The notes beneath the pieces are model-generated. The model was given only the letters and a program-made list of their open reading frames with translations, searched no databases and was not told the DNA's origin. The position numbers and the translations under genes are program-made. 64,000 nt of DNA from the IMG/VR virus record IMGVR_UViG_3300044712_000810, positions 1-64,000 of that record. The stretch is one strand, 5' to 3'. Shown piece by piece: positions 34,627 through 43,629 of this stretch. Positions within the stretch are counted from its first letter, which is position 1. Every line of letters starts with the position of its first letter.

Positions 34627-34701
34627 TCTGGGTTAGTTCAGTGGCAGAACGTCTGGCTGTTAACCAGAATGTCGGGAGTTCGAACCTCTCACCCAGAGCC
34701 A
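34627..34701 (+). tRNA. tRNA-Asn(GTT)
   Basis: Cloverleaf: TCTGGGT/ACCCAGA, anticodon arm TCTGG-CTGTTAA-CCAGA, T arm GGGAG-TTCGAAC-CTCTC, G73, encoded CCA. Confidence 0.95.
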
Positions 34702-37174: not shown

Positions 37175-37221
37175 CACAAGAATGGGGGTGGAAACACCCC
37201 CATTTTTAATATTCTCTTTTT

Positions 37222-37233
37222 TCATATAGAAAT
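37222..37233 (+). promoter_or_regulatory. TCATATAGAAAT putative promoter of the Ro60/ncRNA operon
   Basis: Follows the terminator GGGGGTG-GAAA-CACCCC-ATTTTT. Confidence 0.7.
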
Positions 37234-37359
37234 AATACCAATGCGCGAGTAACCGTGTCGCCAACTTTTGGTTACATGCGTAAACCATTGATGTGCAAAC
37301 ATCGATGGTTTTATTGCACAGTCCTCCTGTTTAATTTTAACAACCTTTGGGAGGTTTAA

Positions 37360-38982
37360 ATGAAGAAAGTCGTAAAATCAGTGGAAAAGGCAATTTACAA
37401 AAACCCAACAGCGACAGCAGACACTGTCAACAAACACGGCACAAAAGCTTGGACTCAGTCCGATAGCACTCGTGTCGATCAGATCATGATGACAGGTACA
37501 TTTGGAAACTCGTTCTACGCCTCCGGCGACGAACTTGTGAAAGATGCTATCGAAGTCATCGAACGCGTGGCAAAGAAAGATCCTGCGCTGCTTGCATCAA
37601 CCATCGTGAAGGGTCGTAATGACGGCTTCATCAGAACTGCACCGTTAATCGGTCTAACAGTTCTATCGATGCACGCTCCAGCTGAATTTCGTAAAATCTT
37701 CAACGATACCGTGAAAACCGGTAACGACCTTGAAGACTTCATGAAGTTCGCATCAACCATGCGTAAAGGATTCGGAACTGCAATCAAGAAAGCTATGTGG
37801 GGATGGCTGTTTGAAAAGGTAACACCTTTCTACGCAACCAAATACACAAAGCAAATCGCGAACGCAATTTCCGTTTCGCATCCAAGAACACTCGATCCTA
37901 TCTTCGATTACATCATGCAGCACACTGCTGGTAAATCGAGAAACTATGCGGCTGCTCTCAAAAAGTATCCTGCCCTTCGTGGTATGGAAGAAGCAAAGGT
38001 AGCAGTTCAAAACAAAGACTGGAAGAAAGCCCAGAAACTAATCGACGAGCACAGACTCGATCCGACTACTTTTCTTGGCATGGGAACAATGACAAAAGAT
38101 GTGTGGAAATCACTTTCTGCACAATTTGGTGTCATGGCATATCTCAAATACCTTAACAAGATCGTCCGCGAGGATGCTCTTGATCCTAAGGTAATGAGAG
38201 AAAAGCTAAAACCTGAAGTCCTGAACAAGGCAAAGGTTTTCCCATTCCGTCTTTACATCGCAAGAGAAAACATCCAGAACGCAACAGTTCGTGATCATCT
38301 CGCCCAAGTCCTCGACGACTACGGCAAGATTTACAACTGGGAATCTTGGGGTGACAAGCAATTTGTCATCGCACCAGACGTTTCTGGATCAATGGTTCAA
38401 GCTGTACGTGGATCTAAACTAACTCCAGCCACAGTTGCTGGTATGTTCAGTGGATTCCTGTACAAATTCATTCCAGGAAGTATTCTTCTTCCTTGGAGCA
38501 CTGAAGTTCGTCCGAACCTCGTGCGTCCTCGTCAGGACTCTGTTCTGACACATATCGAAAGTATTGCCCGTGCAAACGGCGGTGGAACAGCAATGGCTTC
38601 ACCGATCGATCACATGATCCGCAATAAGATCAAGTGTGACTACTTCATCGGAATCACCGATTCTGAAGAATGGTCTGCACCTGTGACCAGATATGCTTGG
38701 GGCGGACGTAGATCCGATGAAAGACAGTGGATTGATGCTTGGACTGAATACAGAAATAAAGTCAACAAGAATGCGAAAGCAATTCTTCTTCGTGTGGATG
38801 GATACCCAACACAGCCATTCGATGACAAAACAGCTAAAGAAAATGGAATTTACCAGATCTTCGGTTGGTCCGACAACGTACTCAAATACGTTGATTACGT
38901 GATCAATTCTGAAAAATATGTGGTAAAAGAAAAAGAAAAGAAAGTTGAAAAACTTGATAAATATGTAACTATCGAAAGATAG
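37360..38982 (+). CDS. Ro60/Rsr ortholog (TROVE + C-terminal vWA)
   Basis: TGTFGNSFYA, RNDGFIRTAP, FPFRLYIA, vWA MIDAS-like APDVSGSM, GGGTAMASP, ITDSEEW. Confidence 0.9.
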   Translation: MKKVVKSVEKAIYKNPTATADTVNKHGTKAWTQSDSTRVDQIMMTGTFGNSFYASGDELVKDAIEVIERVAKKDPALLASTIVKGRNDGFIRTAPLIGLTVLSMHAPAEFRKIFNDTVKTGNDLEDFMKFASTMRKGFGTAIKKAMWGWLFEKVTPFYATKYTKQIANAISVSHPRTLDPIFDYIMQHTAGKSRNYAAALKKYPALRGMEEAKVAVQNKDWKKAQKLIDEHRLDPTTFLGMGTMTKDVWKSLSAQFGVMAYLKYLNKIVREDALDPKVMREKLKPEVLNKAKVFPFRLYIARENIQNATVRDHLAQVLDDYGKIYNWESWGDKQFVIAPDVSGSMVQAVRGSKLTPATVAGMFSGFLYKFIPGSILLPWSTEVRPNLVRPRQDSVLTHIESIARANGGGTAMASPIDHMIRNKIKCDYFIGITDSEEWSAPVTRYAWGGRRSDERQWIDAWTEYRNKVNKNAKAILLRVDGYPTQPFDDKTAKENGIYQIFGWSDNVLKYVDYVINSEKYVVKEKEKKVEKLDKYVTIER

Positions 38983-39031
38983 TTTTCAGGTGGGAGTTAT
39001 TACACTCCCACCAACTACAAATTTCTAAATT

Positions 39032-39100
39032 TGCAAGGTATCAGTAATAAGTTTCAACGCACTGTTAAAGCCAAAAAGGCTTATTACATTAGTCCTTGCG
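39032..39100 (+). ncRNA. Scaffold RNA unit 1 (Asn GUU anticodon-loop cargo)
   Basis: GCAAGG/CCTTGC closing stem; GTAATAAGTTT/AGGCTTATTAC inner stem; CAAC-GC-A-CTGTTAA-A-GC. Confidence 0.8.
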
Positions 39101-39115
39101 CTTCTTTCAAATTTT

Positions 39116-39338
39116 GGAAGGTATCAGAAAAACGTTCAACGCACATGAAATGCACCCGAGTTAACACTCGTGTAGGTTCGAGTCCTACCCTTGGCACCAA
39201 TCATGGGGACCATCTAGAGAGAAAGTCGAAAGACCGCTTCAAAAGATAGCAATTAAATTTGCAGGTACCCTCCAAATTTTGCCGAGGTGGCGGAATTGGT
39301 AGACGCAGGTAAAAACAATGTTTTTCATCAGTCCTTCC
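39116..39338 (+). ncRNA. Scaffold RNA unit 2 enclosing a circularly permuted tRNA-Leu-like body
   Basis: GGAAGG/CCTTCC; 3' half 39154-39199 (variable arm, T arm, CCTTGGC-A-CCA) precedes 5' half 39281-39310 (GCCGAGGTGGCGGAATTGGTAGACGCA). Confidence 0.85.
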
Positions 39339-39347
39339 GACTTATTT

Positions 39348-39425
39348 TGTGGAGTAGAGTAGTCTGGTCTAACTCGTAGGTCTCATAAGCCTAGTACACA
39401 GGTTCAAATCCTGTCTCCGCAACCA
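39348..39425 (+). tRNA. tRNA-Met(CAT), initiator-like sequence
   Basis: TGTGGAG/CTCCGCA, D stem GAGT/ACTC, TAGGT-CTCATAA-GCCTA, ACAGG-TTCAAAT-CCTGT, ACCA end. Confidence 0.9.
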
Positions 39426-39429
39426 CTTT

Positions 39430-39523
39430 TGAAAGGTAATCCGACAAGATTCAACGTTACCATTATACGTCTATCGGGCAACTCGACGCCCGATCGAAAC
39501 CGTCTTGTCATCTAGTCCTTTCA
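39430..39523 (+). ncRNA. Scaffold RNA unit 3
   Basis: TGAAAGG/CCTTTCA; GACAAGAT/GTCTTGTC; TTCAACG; insert hairpin ATCGGGC/GCCCGAT. Confidence 0.8.
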
Positions 39524-39529
39524 CCCTTT

Positions 39530-39592
39530 TGCAAGGTAAATGAATCTGGATTCAACGGAAAACTGAAAACACCAGATTTAACAGTCCTTGCA
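39530..39592 (+). ncRNA. Scaffold RNA unit 4 (minimal; possible Phe GAA loop CTGAAAA)
   Basis: TGCAAGG/CCTTGCA; AATCTGG/CCAGATT; TTCAACG. Confidence 0.8.
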
Positions 39593-39612
39593 CTTAAAAT
39601 TTCTCACAACTT

Positions 39613-39757
39613 TTGAGAGGTAACCCCGAGTAGGTTCAACGCTATATGGAAGCCGGTGTCATCGGTTCGAATCCGATCTCCTCCATCACAAATCTTTTGG
39701 GGGAGTAGCTCAGTCTGGTAGAGCACGAAAAACAATCTGCTCAATTAGTCCTCTCAA
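39613..39757 (+). ncRNA. Scaffold RNA unit 5 enclosing a circularly permuted tRNA-Ala-like body
   Basis: TTGAGAGG/CCTCTCAA; T arm ATCGG-TTCGAAT-CCGAT and CTCCTCC-A (39661-39685) precede GGGGGAGTAGCTCAGTCTGGTAGAGCAC (from 39699); G3:U70. Confidence 0.85.
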
Positions 39758-39771
39758 CTTTTAAAAATTTT

Positions 39772-39846
39772 GGTCTAGTAGCTTAATGGTAGAGCACCTG
39801 CCTGTCGAGCAGCAAGATGTCGGTTCAAATCCGATCTAGATCGCCA
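39772..39846 (+). tRNA. tRNA-Asp(GTC), atypical anticodon arm
   Basis: GGTCTAG/CTAGATC, loop CTGTCGA, GTCGG-TTCAAAT-CCGAT, G73 and CCA. Confidence 0.85.
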
Positions 39847-39851
39847 TCTTT

Positions 39852-39970
39852 TGCAAGGTAACCCCGTGTGGTTTCAACGGAAACTAACAAGTCATCAAAA
39901 CTGGTTACAGTAGGATTCGAAGCCTACAACACCTTCGGGTGAAACGAGCCACACAAACCATGTCCTTGCA
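39852..39970 (+). ncRNA. Scaffold RNA unit 6 (T-arm-like and UUCG hairpins)
   Basis: TGCAAGG/CCTTGCA; GTGTGGTTT/GAGCCACAC; GTAGG-ATTCGAAG-CCTAC; CACC-TTCG-GGTG. Confidence 0.8.
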
Positions 39971-39981
39971 CTTAAAATTTT

Positions 39982-40067
39982 GGGGATGTTACACAAGCGG
40001 CAACGTGACCTGGCTGTAACCCAGGTGCCTTCGGGCTTCAGAGGTTCGAGTCCTCTCTTCCCCACCA
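39982..40067 (+). tRNA. tRNA-Tyr(GTA)
   Basis: GGGGATG/CTTCCCC, CCTGG-CTGTAAC-CCAGG, long variable arm, AGAGG-TTCGAGT-CCTCT, ACCA. Confidence 0.92.
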
Positions 40068-40085
40068 TTATAATTTGGAGATATT

Positions 40086-40481
40086 ATGTTTGATTTCAAT
40101 AAATGCGACAATCCAAAAAAGCAAGGTAATATTGGAATTGGTATCGCAATCGCATGGTTCGTAAAAAATGGTTGTACCGTATCTATTCCATTAACAGATT
40201 GTCAAGAATATGATCTTGTCATCGATGATATTAATGGAAAATTATACAAAGTTCAAGTTAAAACTACAACATTTAAAGAATTTAATACTTATAAAATTAA
40301 CTTAAAAACCTGTGGTGGCAATCAAAGTTTTAATACAATTAAAAAATTCGATAAAACGAAAGTAGATTTATTATTCATTGTTACCTGTGAAGGTGATATG
40401 TATTTAATTCCAACAAATAAAATAACACAAACAAATTGTTTAAAACTTGGTGAAAAATATCAAGACTGTAAAGTTACTTAA
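40086..40481 (+). CDS. Free-standing PD-(D/E)XK endonuclease (I-Ssp6803I/PDDEXK_5-like)
   Basis: KQGNIG...VSIPL.D...YDLVID...LYKVQVKT...KVDLLFI. Confidence 0.8.
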   Translation: MFDFNKCDNPKKQGNIGIGIAIAWFVKNGCTVSIPLTDCQEYDLVIDDINGKLYKVQVKTTTFKEFNTYKINLKTCGGNQSFNTIKKFDKTKVDLLFIVTCEGDMYLIPTNKITQTNCLKLGEKYQDCKVT

Positions 40482-40494
40482 AATTTCCACTTAT

Positions 40495-40577
40495 TTGAAG
40501 GGTAAACCGACAAGTTTCAACGCTCATAACGTATTCGCGCCATCTTGCGAATCTAACTTGTCACGCAGTCCCTTCAA
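40495..40577 (+). ncRNA. Scaffold RNA unit 7 (Met CAU anticodon-loop cargo)
   Basis: TTGAAGGG/CCCTTCAA; GACAAGTT/AACTTGTC; CAAC-G-CTCATAA-C. Confidence 0.8.
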
Positions 40578-40583
40578 CTTTTT

Positions 40584-40654
40584 TGTGAGGTATCAGTAAT
40601 AAGTTTCAACGCCCCTTGCACGAGCCTAAAACGCTTATTACACAAGTCCTCACA
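40584..40654 (+). ncRNA. Scaffold RNA unit 8 (Ala UGC anticodon-loop cargo)
   Basis: TGTGAGG/CCTCACA; same inner stem as unit 1; GCCC-CTTGCAC-GAGC. Confidence 0.8.
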
Positions 40655-40671
40655 TTTAAATTTCCAAATTT

Positions 40672-40805
40672 TGGAAGGTATCAAGAAACATCCAACGTTA
40701 ACTCCAAACCGGGGGTTATGGTTCAAGTCCATACATTTTGCCAAATAAGGCAGTGTAATGTAATGTAGCATACCGGTTCAACGCAGTTTCTTAAAAGTCC
40801 TTCCA
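40672..40805 (+). ncRNA. Scaffold RNA unit 9 enclosing a permuted tRNA-Trp-like body
   Basis: TGGAAGG/CCTTCCA; CTCCAAA-CCGG, T arm TATGG-TTCAAGT-CCATA, closed acceptor hairpin, then D arm ATGT/GCAT and CCGGT. Confidence 0.75.
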
Positions 40806-40812
40806 CATTTTT

Positions 40813-40880
40813 TGCGAGGTATTCTTCCAGGATTCAACGATCCTCTAAATCGAAAACGACCCTGGATATCAGTCCTCGCG
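40813..40880 (+). ncRNA. Scaffold RNA unit 10 (CGAT-CCTCTAA-ATCG stem-loop, Arg UCU-like)
   Basis: TGCGAGG/CCTCGCG; TCCAGG/CCTGGA; TTCAACG. Confidence 0.8.
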
Positions 40881-40900
40881 ACTTTTTTAAGGAGAACCAC

Positions 40901-41077
40901 ATGTGTAAAGATGAATGCACTTGCGAAGTCAAGTGTCCAATCTGTCAAGAATTGATAGATAAACATGGTGGATTATATCCAAACCAAGAAACAATCAAAG
41001 CCATCGAAGAAGTTCGAAACGGCAAAACAAAAACATTTAATTCAGTTGAAGAGTTATTTAACGAATTACACAAATAA
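40901..41077 (+). CDS. 58-aa protein: Cys-rich N-terminus plus DinJ/RelB-type C-terminal toxin-binding segment (not in ORF track)
   Basis: AAGGAG RBS; hand translation MCKDECTCEVKCPICQELIDKHGGLYPNQETIKAIEEVRNGKTKTFNSVEELFNELHK; followed by terminator CGGGTC-TTCG-GACCC. Confidence 0.75.
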   Translation: MCKDECTCEVKCPICQELIDKHGGLYPNQETIKAIEEVRNGKTKTFNSVEELFNELHK

Positions 41078-41114
41078 CCGGGTCTTCGGACCCAATTTTT
41101 ATTTTTACCTAAAG

Positions 41115-41126
41115 TCATATAGAAAT
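41115..41126 (+). promoter_or_regulatory. TCATATAGAAAT putative promoter
   Basis: Follows the terminator at ~41079-41100. Confidence 0.65.
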
Positions 41127-42511: not shown

Positions 42512-42525
42512 ACTTGGAGTCAACC

Positions 42526-43629
42526 ATGTCGTGTCTGGATAAATGCGCATTTCTTATTCCATATACTCAAATAGAGGCAGGTGCACAAACACAATTGTGC
42601 AACTATTTAAAAGAACCATTTTGCCTCCGCGCAGCTGTAATGCCAGACATCCATACCGGATATGCGTTACCAGTTGGTGCGGTTGTATTGCTCGAAGGAG
42701 TAATATCACCAGCAGCAGTTGGTGTTGATATAGGTTGCGGAATGTGTTGTATTCGTACAGATGTTCCGATCAAACATATCAAAGGAAAAGAAGAAAAACT
42801 ATTTAAACAAATATATTCTACTATTCCAGTTGGATTTGGTAGTCATGCAAAAAAAAGAGACTATCCTGATTTCAAATCAGCAATACTGGATAAAAAACTG
42901 GATGCAGCAATAAATTTAAAATTAAAAGAACAACTTGGAACTCTCGGTGGTGGGAATCACTTTATTGAAATTGGTGAAACACGAGAAGGAAATATAGGAA
43001 TTACTATTCATAGTGGATCACGTAATGCTGGAAAGCAAATATGTGATCATTACTGTGCATTAGCTAAAAAAATTCATACTGAATTAAAAGGTGACTTTCT
43101 ATTCTTCGATCGTGATGAAGGAAAGGCATACTTTCAAGATATGAACTTTATGTTATCATATGCATTAGAAAATCGTTTAAATATGATGGTTGACATTCTT
43201 GATATACTTGGGTTGGATCAAAATCTACTCAAGGAAATCATTAATGAGAATCATAATCATGCCGAAGATCTAGATGGAAAGATTCTGCATCGTAAAGGTG
43301 CAACACCAGCAGCAAAAGACCAATTGGGTGTTATCCCAGGTAATATGCGCGACGGTGTATATATAACTAAAGGTCTTGGCAACGACAAATATCTGTCAAG
43401 TGCAAGTCATGGAGCCGGTCGTAAAGGTTCTAGAACTTGGGCAAAACAAAAAGATACAGTCGAAACATTTGCAAAACTAATGAATGGTATTGTCGCGAAA
43501 GTTGACAAACATACATTGGATGAAGCACCTTGGGCATATAAAAAGATCGAGGATGTAATTAAAGCACAAGAAGGAATTGTGGTTGATATTATCGATCACA
43601 TTAGACCAATCATTAACATCAAAGGATAG
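42526..43629 (+). CDS. rtcB: RtcB 2',3'-cyclic-phosphate/5'-OH RNA ligase
   Basis: MPDIHTG, VGVDIGCG, LGTLGGGNHFIE, IHSGSR, NENHNH, HRKGATP, SASHGAGR, DEAPWAYK. Confidence 0.95.
   Translation: MSCLDKCAFLIPYTQIEAGAQTQLCNYLKEPFCLRAAVMPDIHTGYALPVGAVVLLEGVISPAAVGVDIGCGMCCIRTDVPIKHIKGKEEKLFKQIYSTIPVGFGSHAKKRDYPDFKSAILDKKLDAAINLKLKEQLGTLGGGNHFIEIGETREGNIGITIHSGSRNAGKQICDHYCALAKKIHTELKGDFLFFDRDEGKAYFQDMNFMLSYALENRLNMMVDILDILGLDQNLLKEIINENHNHAEDLDGKILHRKGATPAAKDQLGVIPGNMRDGVYITKGLGNDKYLSSASHGAGRKGSRTWAKQKDTVETFAKLMNGIVAKVDKHTLDEAPWAYKKIEDVIKAQEGIVVDIIDHIRPIINIKG

What the first reader, a model, noticed from the sequence alone, without database searches (positions are those of the whole stretch)
40672..40805. 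Permuted tRNA-Trp-like body that keeps its anticodon loop and has a closed acceptor hairpin (unit 9)
Seen: CTCCAAA-CCGG, variable GGGT, T arm, ACATTTTGCC-AAATAA-GGCAGTGT closed hairpin (contains G-CCA), D arm ATGT-AATGTA-GCAT and CCGGT, which pairs with ACCGG. A second TTCAACG follows. Known: TrpRS reads the CCA anticodon and G73. Inference: the closest match here to classical YrlA architecture, but also carrying an anticodon; a possible TrpRS or tRNase decoy.
Basis: partly seen in the sequence, partly recalled or inferred. Interest (0 to 1): 0.7.

Follow-up and report, generated by a model that had tools for sequence, protein, structure and literature searches.

The report
Phage Y RNA with tRNA-Trp body
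The flagged 134 bases are one of ten small structured RNAs (Y RNAs) encoded just after the Ro60/Rsr gene of a 315-kb jumbo phage; its upper part is a circularly permuted, tRNA-Trp-like fold, and it matters because the whole array, this unit included, carries copies of tRNA anticodon loops, which has not been described for Y RNAs.

Summary
Unit 9 (40672-40805, + strand) is the ninth of ten units sharing one scaffold: helix P1, an internal loop (GGUA / AGUCC), helix P2, then UUCAACG. All ten lie in one operon with a Ro60/Rsr gene in a 315-kb phage genome. A covariance model built from 16 related units without unit 9 finds it full length (53 bits, E about 6e-11). The T, acceptor and D helices covary across 17 units. 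It is therefore a YrlA-type Y RNA, but it misses the Rfam YrlA model and the literal GNCGAA motif.

Its body most resembles the phage's own tRNA-Trp. The string CUCCAAA is not a closed anticodon loop; it lies in the open junction between the anticodon-like stem and P2. Two homologs keep CCAA but not C32-U33.

Five of the ten units hold an exact 7-nt anticodon loop of one of the phage's own tRNAs (1 of 20,000 shuffles reaches this). Anticodon-like hairpins recur in relatives and in classical YrlA "V arms".

Binding to Rsr and any TrpRS or nuclease decoy role are untested. Verdict: new variant of a known kind.

The parts
37223..37238 (+). Phage promoter-like motif CATATAGAAATAATAC upstream of rsr; start of the operon that holds the array
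   Evidence: 11 copies on the + strand of the window against 0.22 expected. It follows the terminator at 37178-37207.
37318..37359 (+). rsr 5' leader with a strand-swapped copy of the P1 motif (AGUCCUCC ... GGGAGGU) that pairs over the ribosome-binding site
   Evidence: Read from the sequence. The same arrangement occurs before rsr in at least 8 relatives. Autoregulation is an inference.
37360..38982 (+). Ro60/Rsr gene (540 aa)
   Evidence: Pfam vWA_Ro60 3e-13 and TROVE 2e-6. PDB hits to Ro60 chains 9NEN and 1YVP, Rsr 2NVO and a TROVE-domain protein 9L5Y.
39025..40882 (+). Array of ten Y-RNA units: U1 39025-39102, U2 39108-39341, U3 39423-39525, U4 39523-39594, U5 39607-39758, U6 39845-39972, U7 40489-40578, U8 40577-40656, U9 40665-40807, U10 40806-40882. 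Interleaved with tRNA-Met 39348-39425, tRNA-Asp 39772-39846, tRNA-Tyr 39982-40067 and a PD-(D/E)XK ORF 40086-40481
   Evidence: The 5' motif gives 8 matches against 0 expected. All ten units lie only at this locus of the 315-kb genome. All share one fold. P1 covaries among the paralogs. tRNAs. ORF.
40672..40678 (+). Unit 9, P1 5' strand (UGGAAGG), followed by the internal-loop motif UAUC
   Evidence: Pairs with 40799-40805; pairing probability 0.8-1.0.
40683..40689 (+). Unit 9, P2 5' strand (AAGAAAC)
   Evidence: Pairs with 40786-40792; pairing probability 0.9-1.0.
40690..40697 (+). Unit 9 copy of the family motif (AUCCAACG; UUCAACG in the other nine units). It has the 5-nt pattern of a T-loop
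   Evidence: The T-loop reading is an inference.
40702..40708 (+). CUCCAAA, identical to the anticodon loop of the phage's own tRNA-Trp. Here it is the 5' strand of the junction between P2 and the anticodon-like stem
   Evidence: CCAA is kept in homologs L149:9621-9765 and L178:5740-5872.
40708..40712 (+). Anticodon-like stem, 3' strand (ACCGG)
   Evidence: 5 Watson-Crick pairs with 40773-40777. The position 27:43 pair covaries in the three homologs.
40717..40733 (+). T arm (UAUGG, loop UUCAAGU, CCAUA)
   Evidence: The helix covaries in 17 units.
40735..40756 (+). Closed acceptor-like hairpin (loop AAAUAA) containing a paired G-CCA
   Evidence: The acceptor helix covaries in the family, but unit 9 is shifted in register.
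40758..40771 (+). D arm (AUGU, loop AAUGUA, GCAU), lacking G18G19
40773..40777 (+). Anticodon-like stem, 5' strand (CCGGU)
40777..40785 (+). Second UUCAACGCA. It sits where sister units have the A-rich strand (UAAAAAG / GAAAAC). Its AACG can pair with CGUU at 40696-40699
   Evidence: This extra helix is not conserved in the homologs.
40786..40805 (+). Unit 9, P2 3' strand (40786-92), internal loop AAAAGU (40793-98; the family motif AGUCC spans 40796-40800) and P1 3' strand (40799-40805)
41080..41093 (+). Intrinsic terminator that ends the rsr / Y-RNA operon. The next promoter-like motif is at 41116
42514..43629 (+). RtcB RNA ligase gene in the next transcription unit (context)
   Evidence: Pfam RtcB 3e-80.

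Best explanation
Unit 9 is a non-coding Y RNA of the YrlA type that belongs to the phage's Ro60/Rsr ribonucleoprotein.

Shown:
- It is co-transcribed with rsr, being one of ten units between one promoter-like motif and one terminator.
- Its two ends form a conserved, covarying stem: P1, an internal loop GGUA / AGUCC, then P2.
- Its upper part has the helices of a circularly permuted tRNA: an anticodon-like stem, a 4-nt variable region, a T arm, an acceptor closed by a loop, and a D arm.

Inferred:
- The stem is the Rsr-binding module. It looks like a diverged version of the GNCGAAN0-1G / UUGUCG site of classical YrlA.
- The tRNA-like module is the effector-binding end. It would tether Rsr to, or compete for, a protein that recognises tRNA.
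- The body descends from a tRNA-Trp gene, with the Y stem joined between positions 31 and 32. That would explain why the Trp anticodon-loop letters, a vestigial G-CCA and a CCGGU/ACCGG stem survive.
- Unit 9 is one entry in a set of Y RNAs that each present the anticodon region of a different tRNA. The neighbouring tRNA genes and RtcB suggest the set serves tRNA repair or protection during infection.

The confidence given is for the identity (an Rsr-associated, YrlA-type Y RNA with a tRNA-derived top), not for the particular cellular role.
For: Genomic setting:
- Rsr identity is established.
- Unit 9 starts 1.7 kb after the rsr stop on the same strand. There is no terminator until 41080, and promoter-like motifs occur only at 37223 and 41116.
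- The ten units share one scaffold and occur only at this locus in 315 kb.

Conservation:
- P1 and P2 covary among the paralogs.
- The same scaffold lies next to rsr in more than 15 contigs whose Rsr is 36-48% identical.
- Model R1, built without unit 9, finds it at 53 bits, E 6e-11.
- All 76 R1 hits in 99 rsr loci lie on the rsr strand.
- The T, acceptor and D helices are 90% paired. Covariation score is 0.80 against 0.19 or less when the partners are slid, and 0 of 500 shuffles reach it.

Link to known Y RNAs:
- Sister unit 5 hits Rfam YrlA with E 2e-5.
- The rsr leaders carry a mimic of the P1 motif over the ribosome-binding site.

tRNA-Trp origin:
- tRNA-Trp is the best match for the body.
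- CCAA is kept in 2 of 2 homologs.

Array-wide anticodon loops:
- 5 of 10 units hold an exact own-tRNA loop; 1 of 20,000 shuffles reaches this.
- In the clade, 16 anticodon-like hairpins are seen against 3.5 +/- 1.8 in shuffles.
- In distant YrlA-like RNAs, 10 are seen against 2.1 +/- 1.4.

Literature: YrlA is described as a circularly permuted tRNA with a closed acceptor (10.1101/312249; PMC4201824).
Against: - There is no evidence that unit 9 is expressed or processed. Public runs cover only the tRNA-like pieces and unit 5.
- There is no binding evidence. The complex predictor does not handle protein-RNA pairs.
- Unit 9 gets no Rfam hit at E up to 10, and it lacks the literal GNCGAA motif.
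- The tRNA-like fold is 4-6 kcal/mol above the MFE.
- The D loop lacks G18G19, so the D/T elbow contact may be weakened.
- The acceptor register is shifted relative to the family.
- Similarity to tRNA-Trp outside the anticodon arm is weak: p about 0.08 for the 5' half, and a tie with tRNA-Thr for the 3' half.
- Only two homologs of this subtype were found.
- The anticodon-loop pattern was noticed after looking at the data, so its p-values are somewhat optimistic.
Confidence: 0.72

Rival explanations
1. Specific decoy or bait. Unit 9 mimics tRNA-Trp closely enough to bind TrpRS or a Trp-specific anticodon nuclease or modification enzyme, and so titrates or senses it. The other units would do the same for other tRNAs.
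For: - Exact copies of own-tRNA anticodon loops occur in 5 of 10 units.
- Hairpins with the anticodon-loop signature (U at loop position 2, purine at position 6) are enriched in relatives.
- The orthologous units L179:503 and L202:2960 keep the hairpin through compensatory changes while the triplet differs.
- The phage carries 32 tRNAs and RtcB. This fits a conflict over tRNA cleavage, as discussed for jumbo phages (PMC7824862).
Against: - In unit 9 the CCA letters are not in a closed 7-nt loop, and one A is missing relative to tRNA-Trp.
- C32-U33 are not conserved in the homologs.
- G-CCA is paired, so there is no free acceptor end.
- No nuclease or synthetase partner is identified.
- The loop copies could simply be a legacy of descent from tRNA genes.
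Confidence: 0.25
2. A permuted pre-tRNA gene. The transcript would be cut in the junction, circularised or re-joined (for example by the phage RtcB) and trimmed at the acceptor, giving a working tRNA-Trp as in the permuted tRNA genes of some algae.
For: - The order is 3' half, then linker, then 5' half.
- G-CCA sits at nearly the right distance from the T arm.
- RtcB is encoded 1.7 kb downstream.
- Sister unit 2 has a perfect 7-bp acceptor plus ACCA.
Against: - Once opened, the acceptor strands would not form a 7-bp stem in the tRNA register. Pairing uses G73-C74-C75.
- The D loop lacks GG, and the loop would be 6 nt.
- ARAGORN does not call it at the default threshold.
- The phage already has a normal tRNA-Trp.
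- The flanking stem is conserved as a structure in units that have no tRNA body at all.
- RtcB lies in a different transcription unit.
Confidence: 0.04
3. Processing punctuation or a decaying relic. The units would be hairpins that only guide RNase cleavage of a tRNA operon, and unit 9 would be a dead tRNA fragment caught between them, with no link to Rsr.
For: - The units are interleaved with real tRNAs and separated by short U-rich spacers.
- The unit 9 body is degenerate: its D loop, acceptor mismatch and MFE gap.
Against: - The phage's main tRNA cluster (275-306 kb, 27 tRNAs) has none of these units.
- The units follow rsr, not tRNAs, across many contigs, and are always on the rsr strand.
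- The tRNA-like helices covary.
- The motif is mimicked in rsr leaders.
Confidence: 0.06

Closest known systems
YrlA (Y RNA-like A; Rfam RF02553; Salmonella Typhimurium, mycobacteria and their phages; Chen et al. 2014, PMC4201824; Wang et al. 2018, 10.1101/312249)
   Same: - It is encoded within 4 kb of rsr on the same strand.
- Its two ends form the Ro-binding stem.
- Its upper module is a circularly permuted tRNA: T arm, acceptor closed by a loop, D arm, with the anticodon-like stem running into the Y stem.
- It occurs in phages.
- In the rsr-yrlBA-rtcBA operon of Salmonella it is a neighbour of RtcB.
   Different: - Unit 9 gives no Rfam hit, and unit 5 reaches only 36 of the 69 bits needed.
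- The 5' motif is GNNNGGUA and the 3' motif AGUCC, instead of GNCGAAN0-1G and UUGUCG.
- UUCAAC stands where YrlA has YUAY.
- There are ten units in one array.
- Anticodon-loop letters are retained. The published YrlA descriptions read here call the hairpin before the T arm a 'less conserved' variable arm, and the passages found do not mention any anticodon mimic in YrlA.
Deinococcus radiodurans Yrn1 and the Rsr / Y RNA / PNPase (RYPER) complex
   Same: - It is a Y RNA that tethers Rsr to an effector through its apical module.
- Chen et al. modelled an 'anticodon arm' in it, with a 5-bp stem and a 6-nt loop.
   Different: - Arm order and topology differ.
- Yrn1 has no full D arm.
- No PNPase link is shown for the phage units.
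Thermus phage phiLo Ro60 with Yrl1/Yrl2 (PMC12135203)
   Same: A phage-encoded Ro60 with Y-like RNAs next to the gene. That Ro60 also matches the window's Rsr (9L5Y, E 5e-8).
   Different: - There are two RNAs with a CGAA bulge, and they lie upstream of the gene.
- The passages read do not describe a tRNA-like body or anticodon copies.
Circularly permuted tRNA genes (Cyanidioschyzon merolae and other algae and archaea; from my own knowledge)
   Same: The 3' half precedes the 5' half, and the break lies at the anticodon loop.
   Different: Those genes are matured into working tRNAs through a bulge-helix-bulge splice and RNase P/Z. Unit 9 has a closed, register-shifted acceptor and a conserved Ro-type stem.
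Phage tRNAs that counter host anticodon nucleases, such as the T5 tRNA-Lys that overcomes PARIS (from my own knowledge; PARIS is named in the title and abstract of PMC11455837)
   Same: Phage RNAs whose anticodon region is what matters in a conflict over tRNA cleavage.
   Different: Those are working tRNAs that replace cleaved ones. The units here cannot be charged, and they sit on a Ro-binding stem.

Membership tests
YrlA-type Y RNA | Encoded within about 4 kb of a Ro60/Rsr gene, on the same strand | tested here: met
   The rsr stop is at 38982 and unit 9 starts at 40672, on the + strand of the same operon. All 76 family hits in 99 rsr loci lie on the rsr strand.
YrlA-type Y RNA | Reaches the Rfam RF02553 gathering score (69 bits) | tested here: not met
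   Unit 9 gives no hit at E up to 10. Unit 5 scores 36.2 bits. No unit in 31 phage or metagenome rsr loci reaches the score.
YrlA-type Y RNA | 5' and 3' ends pair into a long stem with an internal loop (the Ro-binding module) | tested here: met
   P1 and P2 have pairing probability 0.8-1.0 and covary among paralogs and relatives.
YrlA-type Y RNA | GNCGAAN0-1G motif near the 5' end (proposed Rsr contact; PMC4201824) | tested here: not met
   Unit 9 contains no CGAA. GNNNGGUA occupies that position. Intermediate forms (CGAAUGC, GGAUGC, GAGGUGC) in other rsr loci suggest divergence rather than absence.
YrlA-type Y RNA | tRNA-like module in the order T arm, closed acceptor stem-loop, D arm | tested here: met
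   Helices mapped. The family model built without unit 9 aligns it end to end at 53 bits. The helices covary.
YrlA-type Y RNA | Nucleotides for the tRNA tertiary contacts (U8-A14, G18/G19 with U55/C56, G53-C61, U54-A58) | tested here: inconclusive
   U8, A14, G53-C61, U54, U55, C56 and A58 are present. The D loop AAUGUA has a single G, so G18G19 is not met.
YrlA-type Y RNA | Bound by Rsr in vivo; carries tRNA-type modifications | not testable with these tools
No RNA reads cover unit 9.
Functional tRNA-Trp | Cloverleaf detected by tRNA finders, 7-nt anticodon loop, free 5' end and 3' CCA end | tested here: not met
   ARAGORN and Rfam tRNA do not call it in place. When re-permuted it is called only at 90% threshold, with a 6-nt loop. 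The acceptor is closed by a loop.
Permuted pre-tRNA gene | After opening, the halves give a 7-bp acceptor in tRNA register with a discriminator base and CCA; processing motif at the junction | tested here: not met
   The acceptor pairing uses G73-C74-C75 and is shifted by three positions. The bulge-helix-bulge motif was not examined.

The most novel reading that the evidence does not exclude
Ro60/Rsr-associated Y RNAs, in this phage clade and more widely, may act as a display rack for anticodon stem-loops. Each unit of an array would present the anticodon region of a different tRNA on a common Rsr-binding stem. The hairpin that the literature calls the 'V arm' would then really be an anticodon-arm mimic. 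The array would act as decoys, baits or sensors for host enzymes that cut or modify tRNA anticodon loops, working with the phage's own tRNAs and RtcB. Unit 9 would be the Trp entry, in an 'open-loop' form.
Probability: 0.25. Interest if true: 0.85.

Novelty: new variant of a known kind. Interest (0 to 1): 0.62.

Why it matters
The partner and purpose of the tRNA-like end of bacterial and phage Y RNAs have been unknown since YrlA was described in 2014.

This locus gives a concrete, testable lead:
- Ten Y RNAs sit in one operon with Rsr.
- Half of them carry an exact copy of one of the phage's own anticodon loops.
- The same signature appears in relatives and in classical YrlA "V arms".

If the anticodon-like element is functional, it ties Ro60 ribonucleoproteins to the conflict between phages and host anticodon nucleases. 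It would also suggest which enzymes to test.

Even if it is only a legacy of descent, it indicates that Y RNAs were derived from more than one kind of tRNA gene: Trp-like, Leu/Ser-like and others.

The strand-swapped stem motif over the rsr ribosome-binding site offers a simple assay for the Rsr-binding site.

Tried and rejected
- Self-cleaving ribozyme, intron, riboswitch or other known RNA family: Rfam finds only tRNAs at gathering score, and in the array only a weak YrlA hit and tmRNA-like pieces on unit 5.
- Close relatives of the genome: none among deposited phages and none in IMG/VR with the single Rsr protein.
- Loose DNA patterns for the scaffold in IMG/VR gave almost only chance matches. 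Only L135 and L139 looked real.
- Two pattern scans for more unit-9-type homologs found only chance hits. The subtype therefore rests on three members.
- My first relaxed scan for units, based on motif and pairing rules, was too unspecific and was discarded. A stricter version requiring both P1 and P2 was used instead.
- Expression: four public runs, laid on 38900-41100, cover only tRNA-like pieces and unit 5 with tRNA-Asp, and nothing over unit 9. The one 'RNA' run is probably DNA.
- Rsr-RNA complex prediction was not carried out by the tool, so it is evidence neither way.
- An extra helix CGUU/AACG between P2 and the anticodon-like stem of unit 9 improves the energy. It is not conserved in L178, and a different pairing is used in L149, so it is not claimed.
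- A per-unit longest-common-substring test against tRNA anticodon arms was too weak to be informative. It was replaced by an exact-loop count across the array.

Full report
**Setting**

The window is the first 64 kb of a 314,837-bp virus record with direct terminal repeats, that is, a jumbo phage. It has no near relative among deposited phages.

The finding lies in a gene-poor stretch at about 39,020-40,890 on the + strand. Just upstream is a 540-aa ORF (37360-38982) that is a Ro60/Rsr protein:
- Pfam vWA_Ro60 3e-13 and TROVE 2e-6.
- Sequence matches to solved Ro60 chains 9NEN and 1YVP, to Rsr 2NVO and to a TROVE-domain protein 9L5Y.

Further genes nearby:
- a PD-(D/E)XK ORF at 40086-40481, weakly like PDB 2OST, which I recall as the I-Ssp6803I homing endonuclease
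- a small RelB-like ORF
- an HNH endonuclease
- RtcB RNA ligase at 42514-43629 (3e-80)
- an AAA ATPase

A promoter-like motif, CATATAGAAATARTAC, occurs 11 times on the + strand against 0.22 expected. It stands at 37223 and 41116. Intrinsic terminators stand at 37178-37207 and 41080-41093, with none in between. So rsr, the array and the small ORFs form one transcription unit.

**The array**

A 5' motif (TTTTG-NNN-GGTA, a spacer, then YCAACG) occurs 8 times here against 0 expected. A slightly looser form finds ten units, all at this locus and nowhere else in the 315 kb.

All ten fold alike:
- an outer helix P1 (U-G-NNN-GG with CC-NNN-C-A)
- an internal loop (UA.. opposite ..AGU)
- a second helix P2
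- then UUCAACG and a variable apical module

The variable triplet of P1 is matched by its complement in every unit. Three P1 pairs show changes on both sides among six paralogs.

Three real tRNAs (Met, Asp, Tyr) are interleaved with the units.

**Observation check for unit 9**

The stated ends 40672 and 40805 are the ends of P1.

- P1 and P2 are near-certain in the thermodynamic ensemble.
- The tRNA-like helices are not the minimum-energy fold: -30.3 to -32.7 kcal/mol against -36.5. This is common for tRNAs and is not decisive.
- The re-permuted body is called a tRNA by ARAGORN at 90% threshold (Gly|Trp, 6-nt loop). None of 300 shuffles is called. At the default threshold the body itself is not called.

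**Relatives**

The nearest Rsr proteins are only 44-49% identical. Their contigs are phage-like and carry the same scaffold beside rsr on the same strand. In many the motifs read GAGGUG ... UUUCAAC ... AUUCCUC.

Seventeen units with tRNA-like tops were aligned (A3):
- The T, acceptor and D helices are 90% paired.
- 14 of 16 pairs change on both sides.
- The covariation score is 0.80, against 0.19 or less when the partners are slid, and 0 of 500 shuffles reach it.

A covariance model built from 16 of these, leaving unit 9 out, recovers unit 9 end to end at 53.0 bits with E 6.4e-11 (rough). Real tRNAs of the window score 13.6 bits or less.

On 99 rsr loci the model gives 76 matches, every one on the rsr strand.

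**Relation to YrlA**

Unit 5 matches Rfam YrlA at 36 bits (gathering score 69). Unit 9 gives no hit. No unit in 31 other rsr loci reaches the gathering score.

Chen et al. (PMC4201824) define YrlA by:
- position next to rsr
- a GNCGAAN0-1G motif near the 5' end
- T, AS (acceptor) and D stem-loops, plus a 'less conserved' V stem-loop before the T arm that begins after a YUAY motif

Wang et al. (10.1101/312249) describe most YrlAs as circularly permuted tRNAs with a closed acceptor, no free CCA and a kinked anticodon-like stem.

Unit 9 has that architecture but not the literal motifs. More distant rsr loci hit by my model show intermediate forms:
- CGAAUGC, GGAUGC and GAGGUGC for the 5' motif
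- CUACAU and CUUCAU in place of UUCAAC
- UUGUCG against AGUCC on the 3' strand

I therefore read the scaffold as a diverged YrlA Ro-binding module. This is an inference from sequence continuity.

Indirect support for Rsr binding comes from the rsr leaders of the window and at least 8 relatives. They carry the same two half-motifs in swapped order, pairing across the ribosome-binding site. That is what an autoregulatory mimic of the protein's RNA site would look like.

**The anticodon question**

In unit 9, CUCCAAA is identical to the loop of the phage's tRNA-Trp. However, it is not a hairpin loop.

- The 5-bp stem CCGGU/ACCGG is closed by the true 5'-half strand.
- The loop side opens into the junction with P2: 18 nt on the 5' side and 8 nt on the 3' side. 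The 3' side is the second UUCAACGCA.
- With that stem only CUCCAA remains, one A fewer than in tRNA-Trp.

The body's best match among the 32 phage tRNAs is tRNA-Trp, overall and for each half. The statistics outside the anticodon arm are weak.

G-CCA lies about where G73-CCA would be, but it is paired with the 5' GGC. This shifts the acceptor register by three positions.

Two homologs of the same 'open' subtype exist: L149:9621-9765 and L178:5740-5872. Their Rsr is about 41-45% identical.
- Both keep CCAA directly before the stem strand ACAGC.
- L149 has no U33, and L178 has neither C32 nor U33.
- The 27:43 pair covaries.

Further scans found no more.

**The wider pattern**

Within 20 nt after CAACG, five of the ten units hold an exact 7-nt anticodon loop of one of the phage's own tRNAs:

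| Unit | Loop | tRNA |
|---|---|---|
| U1 | CUGUUAA | Asn |
| U7 | CUCAUAA | Met |
| U8 | CUUGCAC | Ala |
| U9 | CUCCAAA | Trp |
| U10 | CUCUAAA | the CUA-anticodon tRNA at 290747 |

Only 1 of 20,000 shuffles, and 1 of 20,000 sets of random genome windows, reach five. Others are near-copies, for example U2 CAUGAAA, U6 CAUCAAA and U4 CUGAAAA.

In most units the loop is closed by a short local stem whose 5' strand is the conserved ACG(C). In tRNA-like units this stem is completed by 2-3 pairs from the remnant after the D arm. The result is a composite anticodon stem from which P2 branches.

Further counts:
- Across 54 units of the clade, hairpins with a 7-nt loop, U at position 2 and a purine at position 6 number 16, against 3.5 +/- 1.8 in shuffles (0 of 2000 reach it).
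- The orthologous units L179:503 and L202:2960 keep the hairpin through compensatory changes while the triplet differs: ACGU-CUGUUAA-ACGU against AUGU-CUUGAUA-ACAU.
- The same signature holds in distant, classical-looking YrlA hits: 10 against 2.1 +/- 1.4, 0 of 2000 shuffles. These include CUCAUAA, CUGCUAA, CUCUUAA, CUUCGAA, CUGAUAA and CUGUCAC.

The published description treats this hairpin as a variable arm. I found no paper describing anticodon copies in Y RNAs. The search covers open-access text only, and the pattern was noticed after the fact.

**Mechanism**

Shown:
- operon membership
- a conserved covarying stem
- a covarying tRNA-like top
- membership of a family that always accompanies rsr
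- copies of anticodon loops

Inferred:
- Rsr binds P1 and the internal loop.
- The top is the effector end.
- Unit 9 descends from tRNA-Trp.

What the top binds is open. The jumbo-phage literature places TROVE proteins with tRNA repair (PMC7824862). The phage has 32 tRNAs and RtcB. I therefore rank a role in tRNA protection or repair first. The sharper decoy or bait idea is a minority bet. A permuted pre-tRNA and mere processing hairpins are both unlikely, for the reasons given under the rival explanations.

**Verdict**

- The YrlA-like reading is supported.
- The 'kept anticodon loop' is true of the letters but not of the loop.
- The decoy role is untested.
- It is a new variant of a known kind. 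The array-wide anticodon copies are the part worth following.

Noticed in passing
window 37318-37359; also L145, L146, L148, L149, L257, L258, L261, L262 just before their rsr start codons: The rsr leader carries the two halves of the Y-RNA P1 motif in swapped order (AGUCCUCC ... GGGAGGU) and pairs across the ribosome-binding site. It looks like translational autoregulation by Rsr through a mimic of its own RNA site.
   Followed up: partly
window 39108-39341 (unit 2): The apical module is a permuted type-II tRNA (Leu/Ser-like) with a long variable arm, a perfect 7-bp acceptor followed by ACCA, and an insert of about 80 nt closing the acceptor. When re-permuted, ARAGORN calls it tRNA-Ser(UGA) with A at position 33. 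RNase P and 3' trimming could in principle split it.
   Followed up: partly
window 40086-40481: A PD-(D/E)XK ORF of Pfam family PF11645 (PDB 2OST, E 0.003; from memory the I-Ssp6803I homing endonuclease, whose natural target is a tRNA gene's anticodon region) sits inside the Y-RNA/tRNA array, right after tRNA-Tyr. It is probably a free-standing homing endonuclease.
   Followed up: partly
genome position 290747-290821 (outside the window) and window 40837-40843 (unit 10): The phage encodes a tRNA with a CUA (amber-reading) anticodon, which ARAGORN labels 'Pyl'. Unit 10 carries its exact loop, CUCUAAA. Units 2 and 6 have loops with A instead of U at position 33.
   Followed up: no
window 34627-34701, 39348-39425, 39772-39846, 39982-40067: The tRNAs beside the array (Asn, Met, Asp, Tyr) are extra copies of species also present in the main tRNA cluster at 275-306 kb. 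Three of the four have GUN anticodons.
   Followed up: no
L261:3481-3834, L262:3460-3815, L260:7050-7431, L178:2949-3318, L166:7862-8228: Several rsr/Y-RNA loci of related phages also encode a tmRNA close to the Y-RNA array.
   Followed up: no
window 6050-54227, + strand: A 16-nt motif, CATATAGAAATARTAC, recurs 11 times on the + strand against 0.22 expected, typically just after terminators. It is probably this phage's own promoter type.
   Followed up: partly
window 39597-39794: Contigs identical to unit 5 plus the start of tRNA-Asp occur in freshwater, wastewater and soil runs from other studies. This phage, or a close relative, is therefore widespread. The 'RNA' run is probably DNA.
   Followed up: no
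L149:8298-8361, L178:5573-5650, L261:3013-3070, L262:3230-3289: A short-unit subtype with the apical string (U)AAUUGAAAA is conserved in four different phages and is not anticodon-like. Its role is unknown.
   Followed up: no
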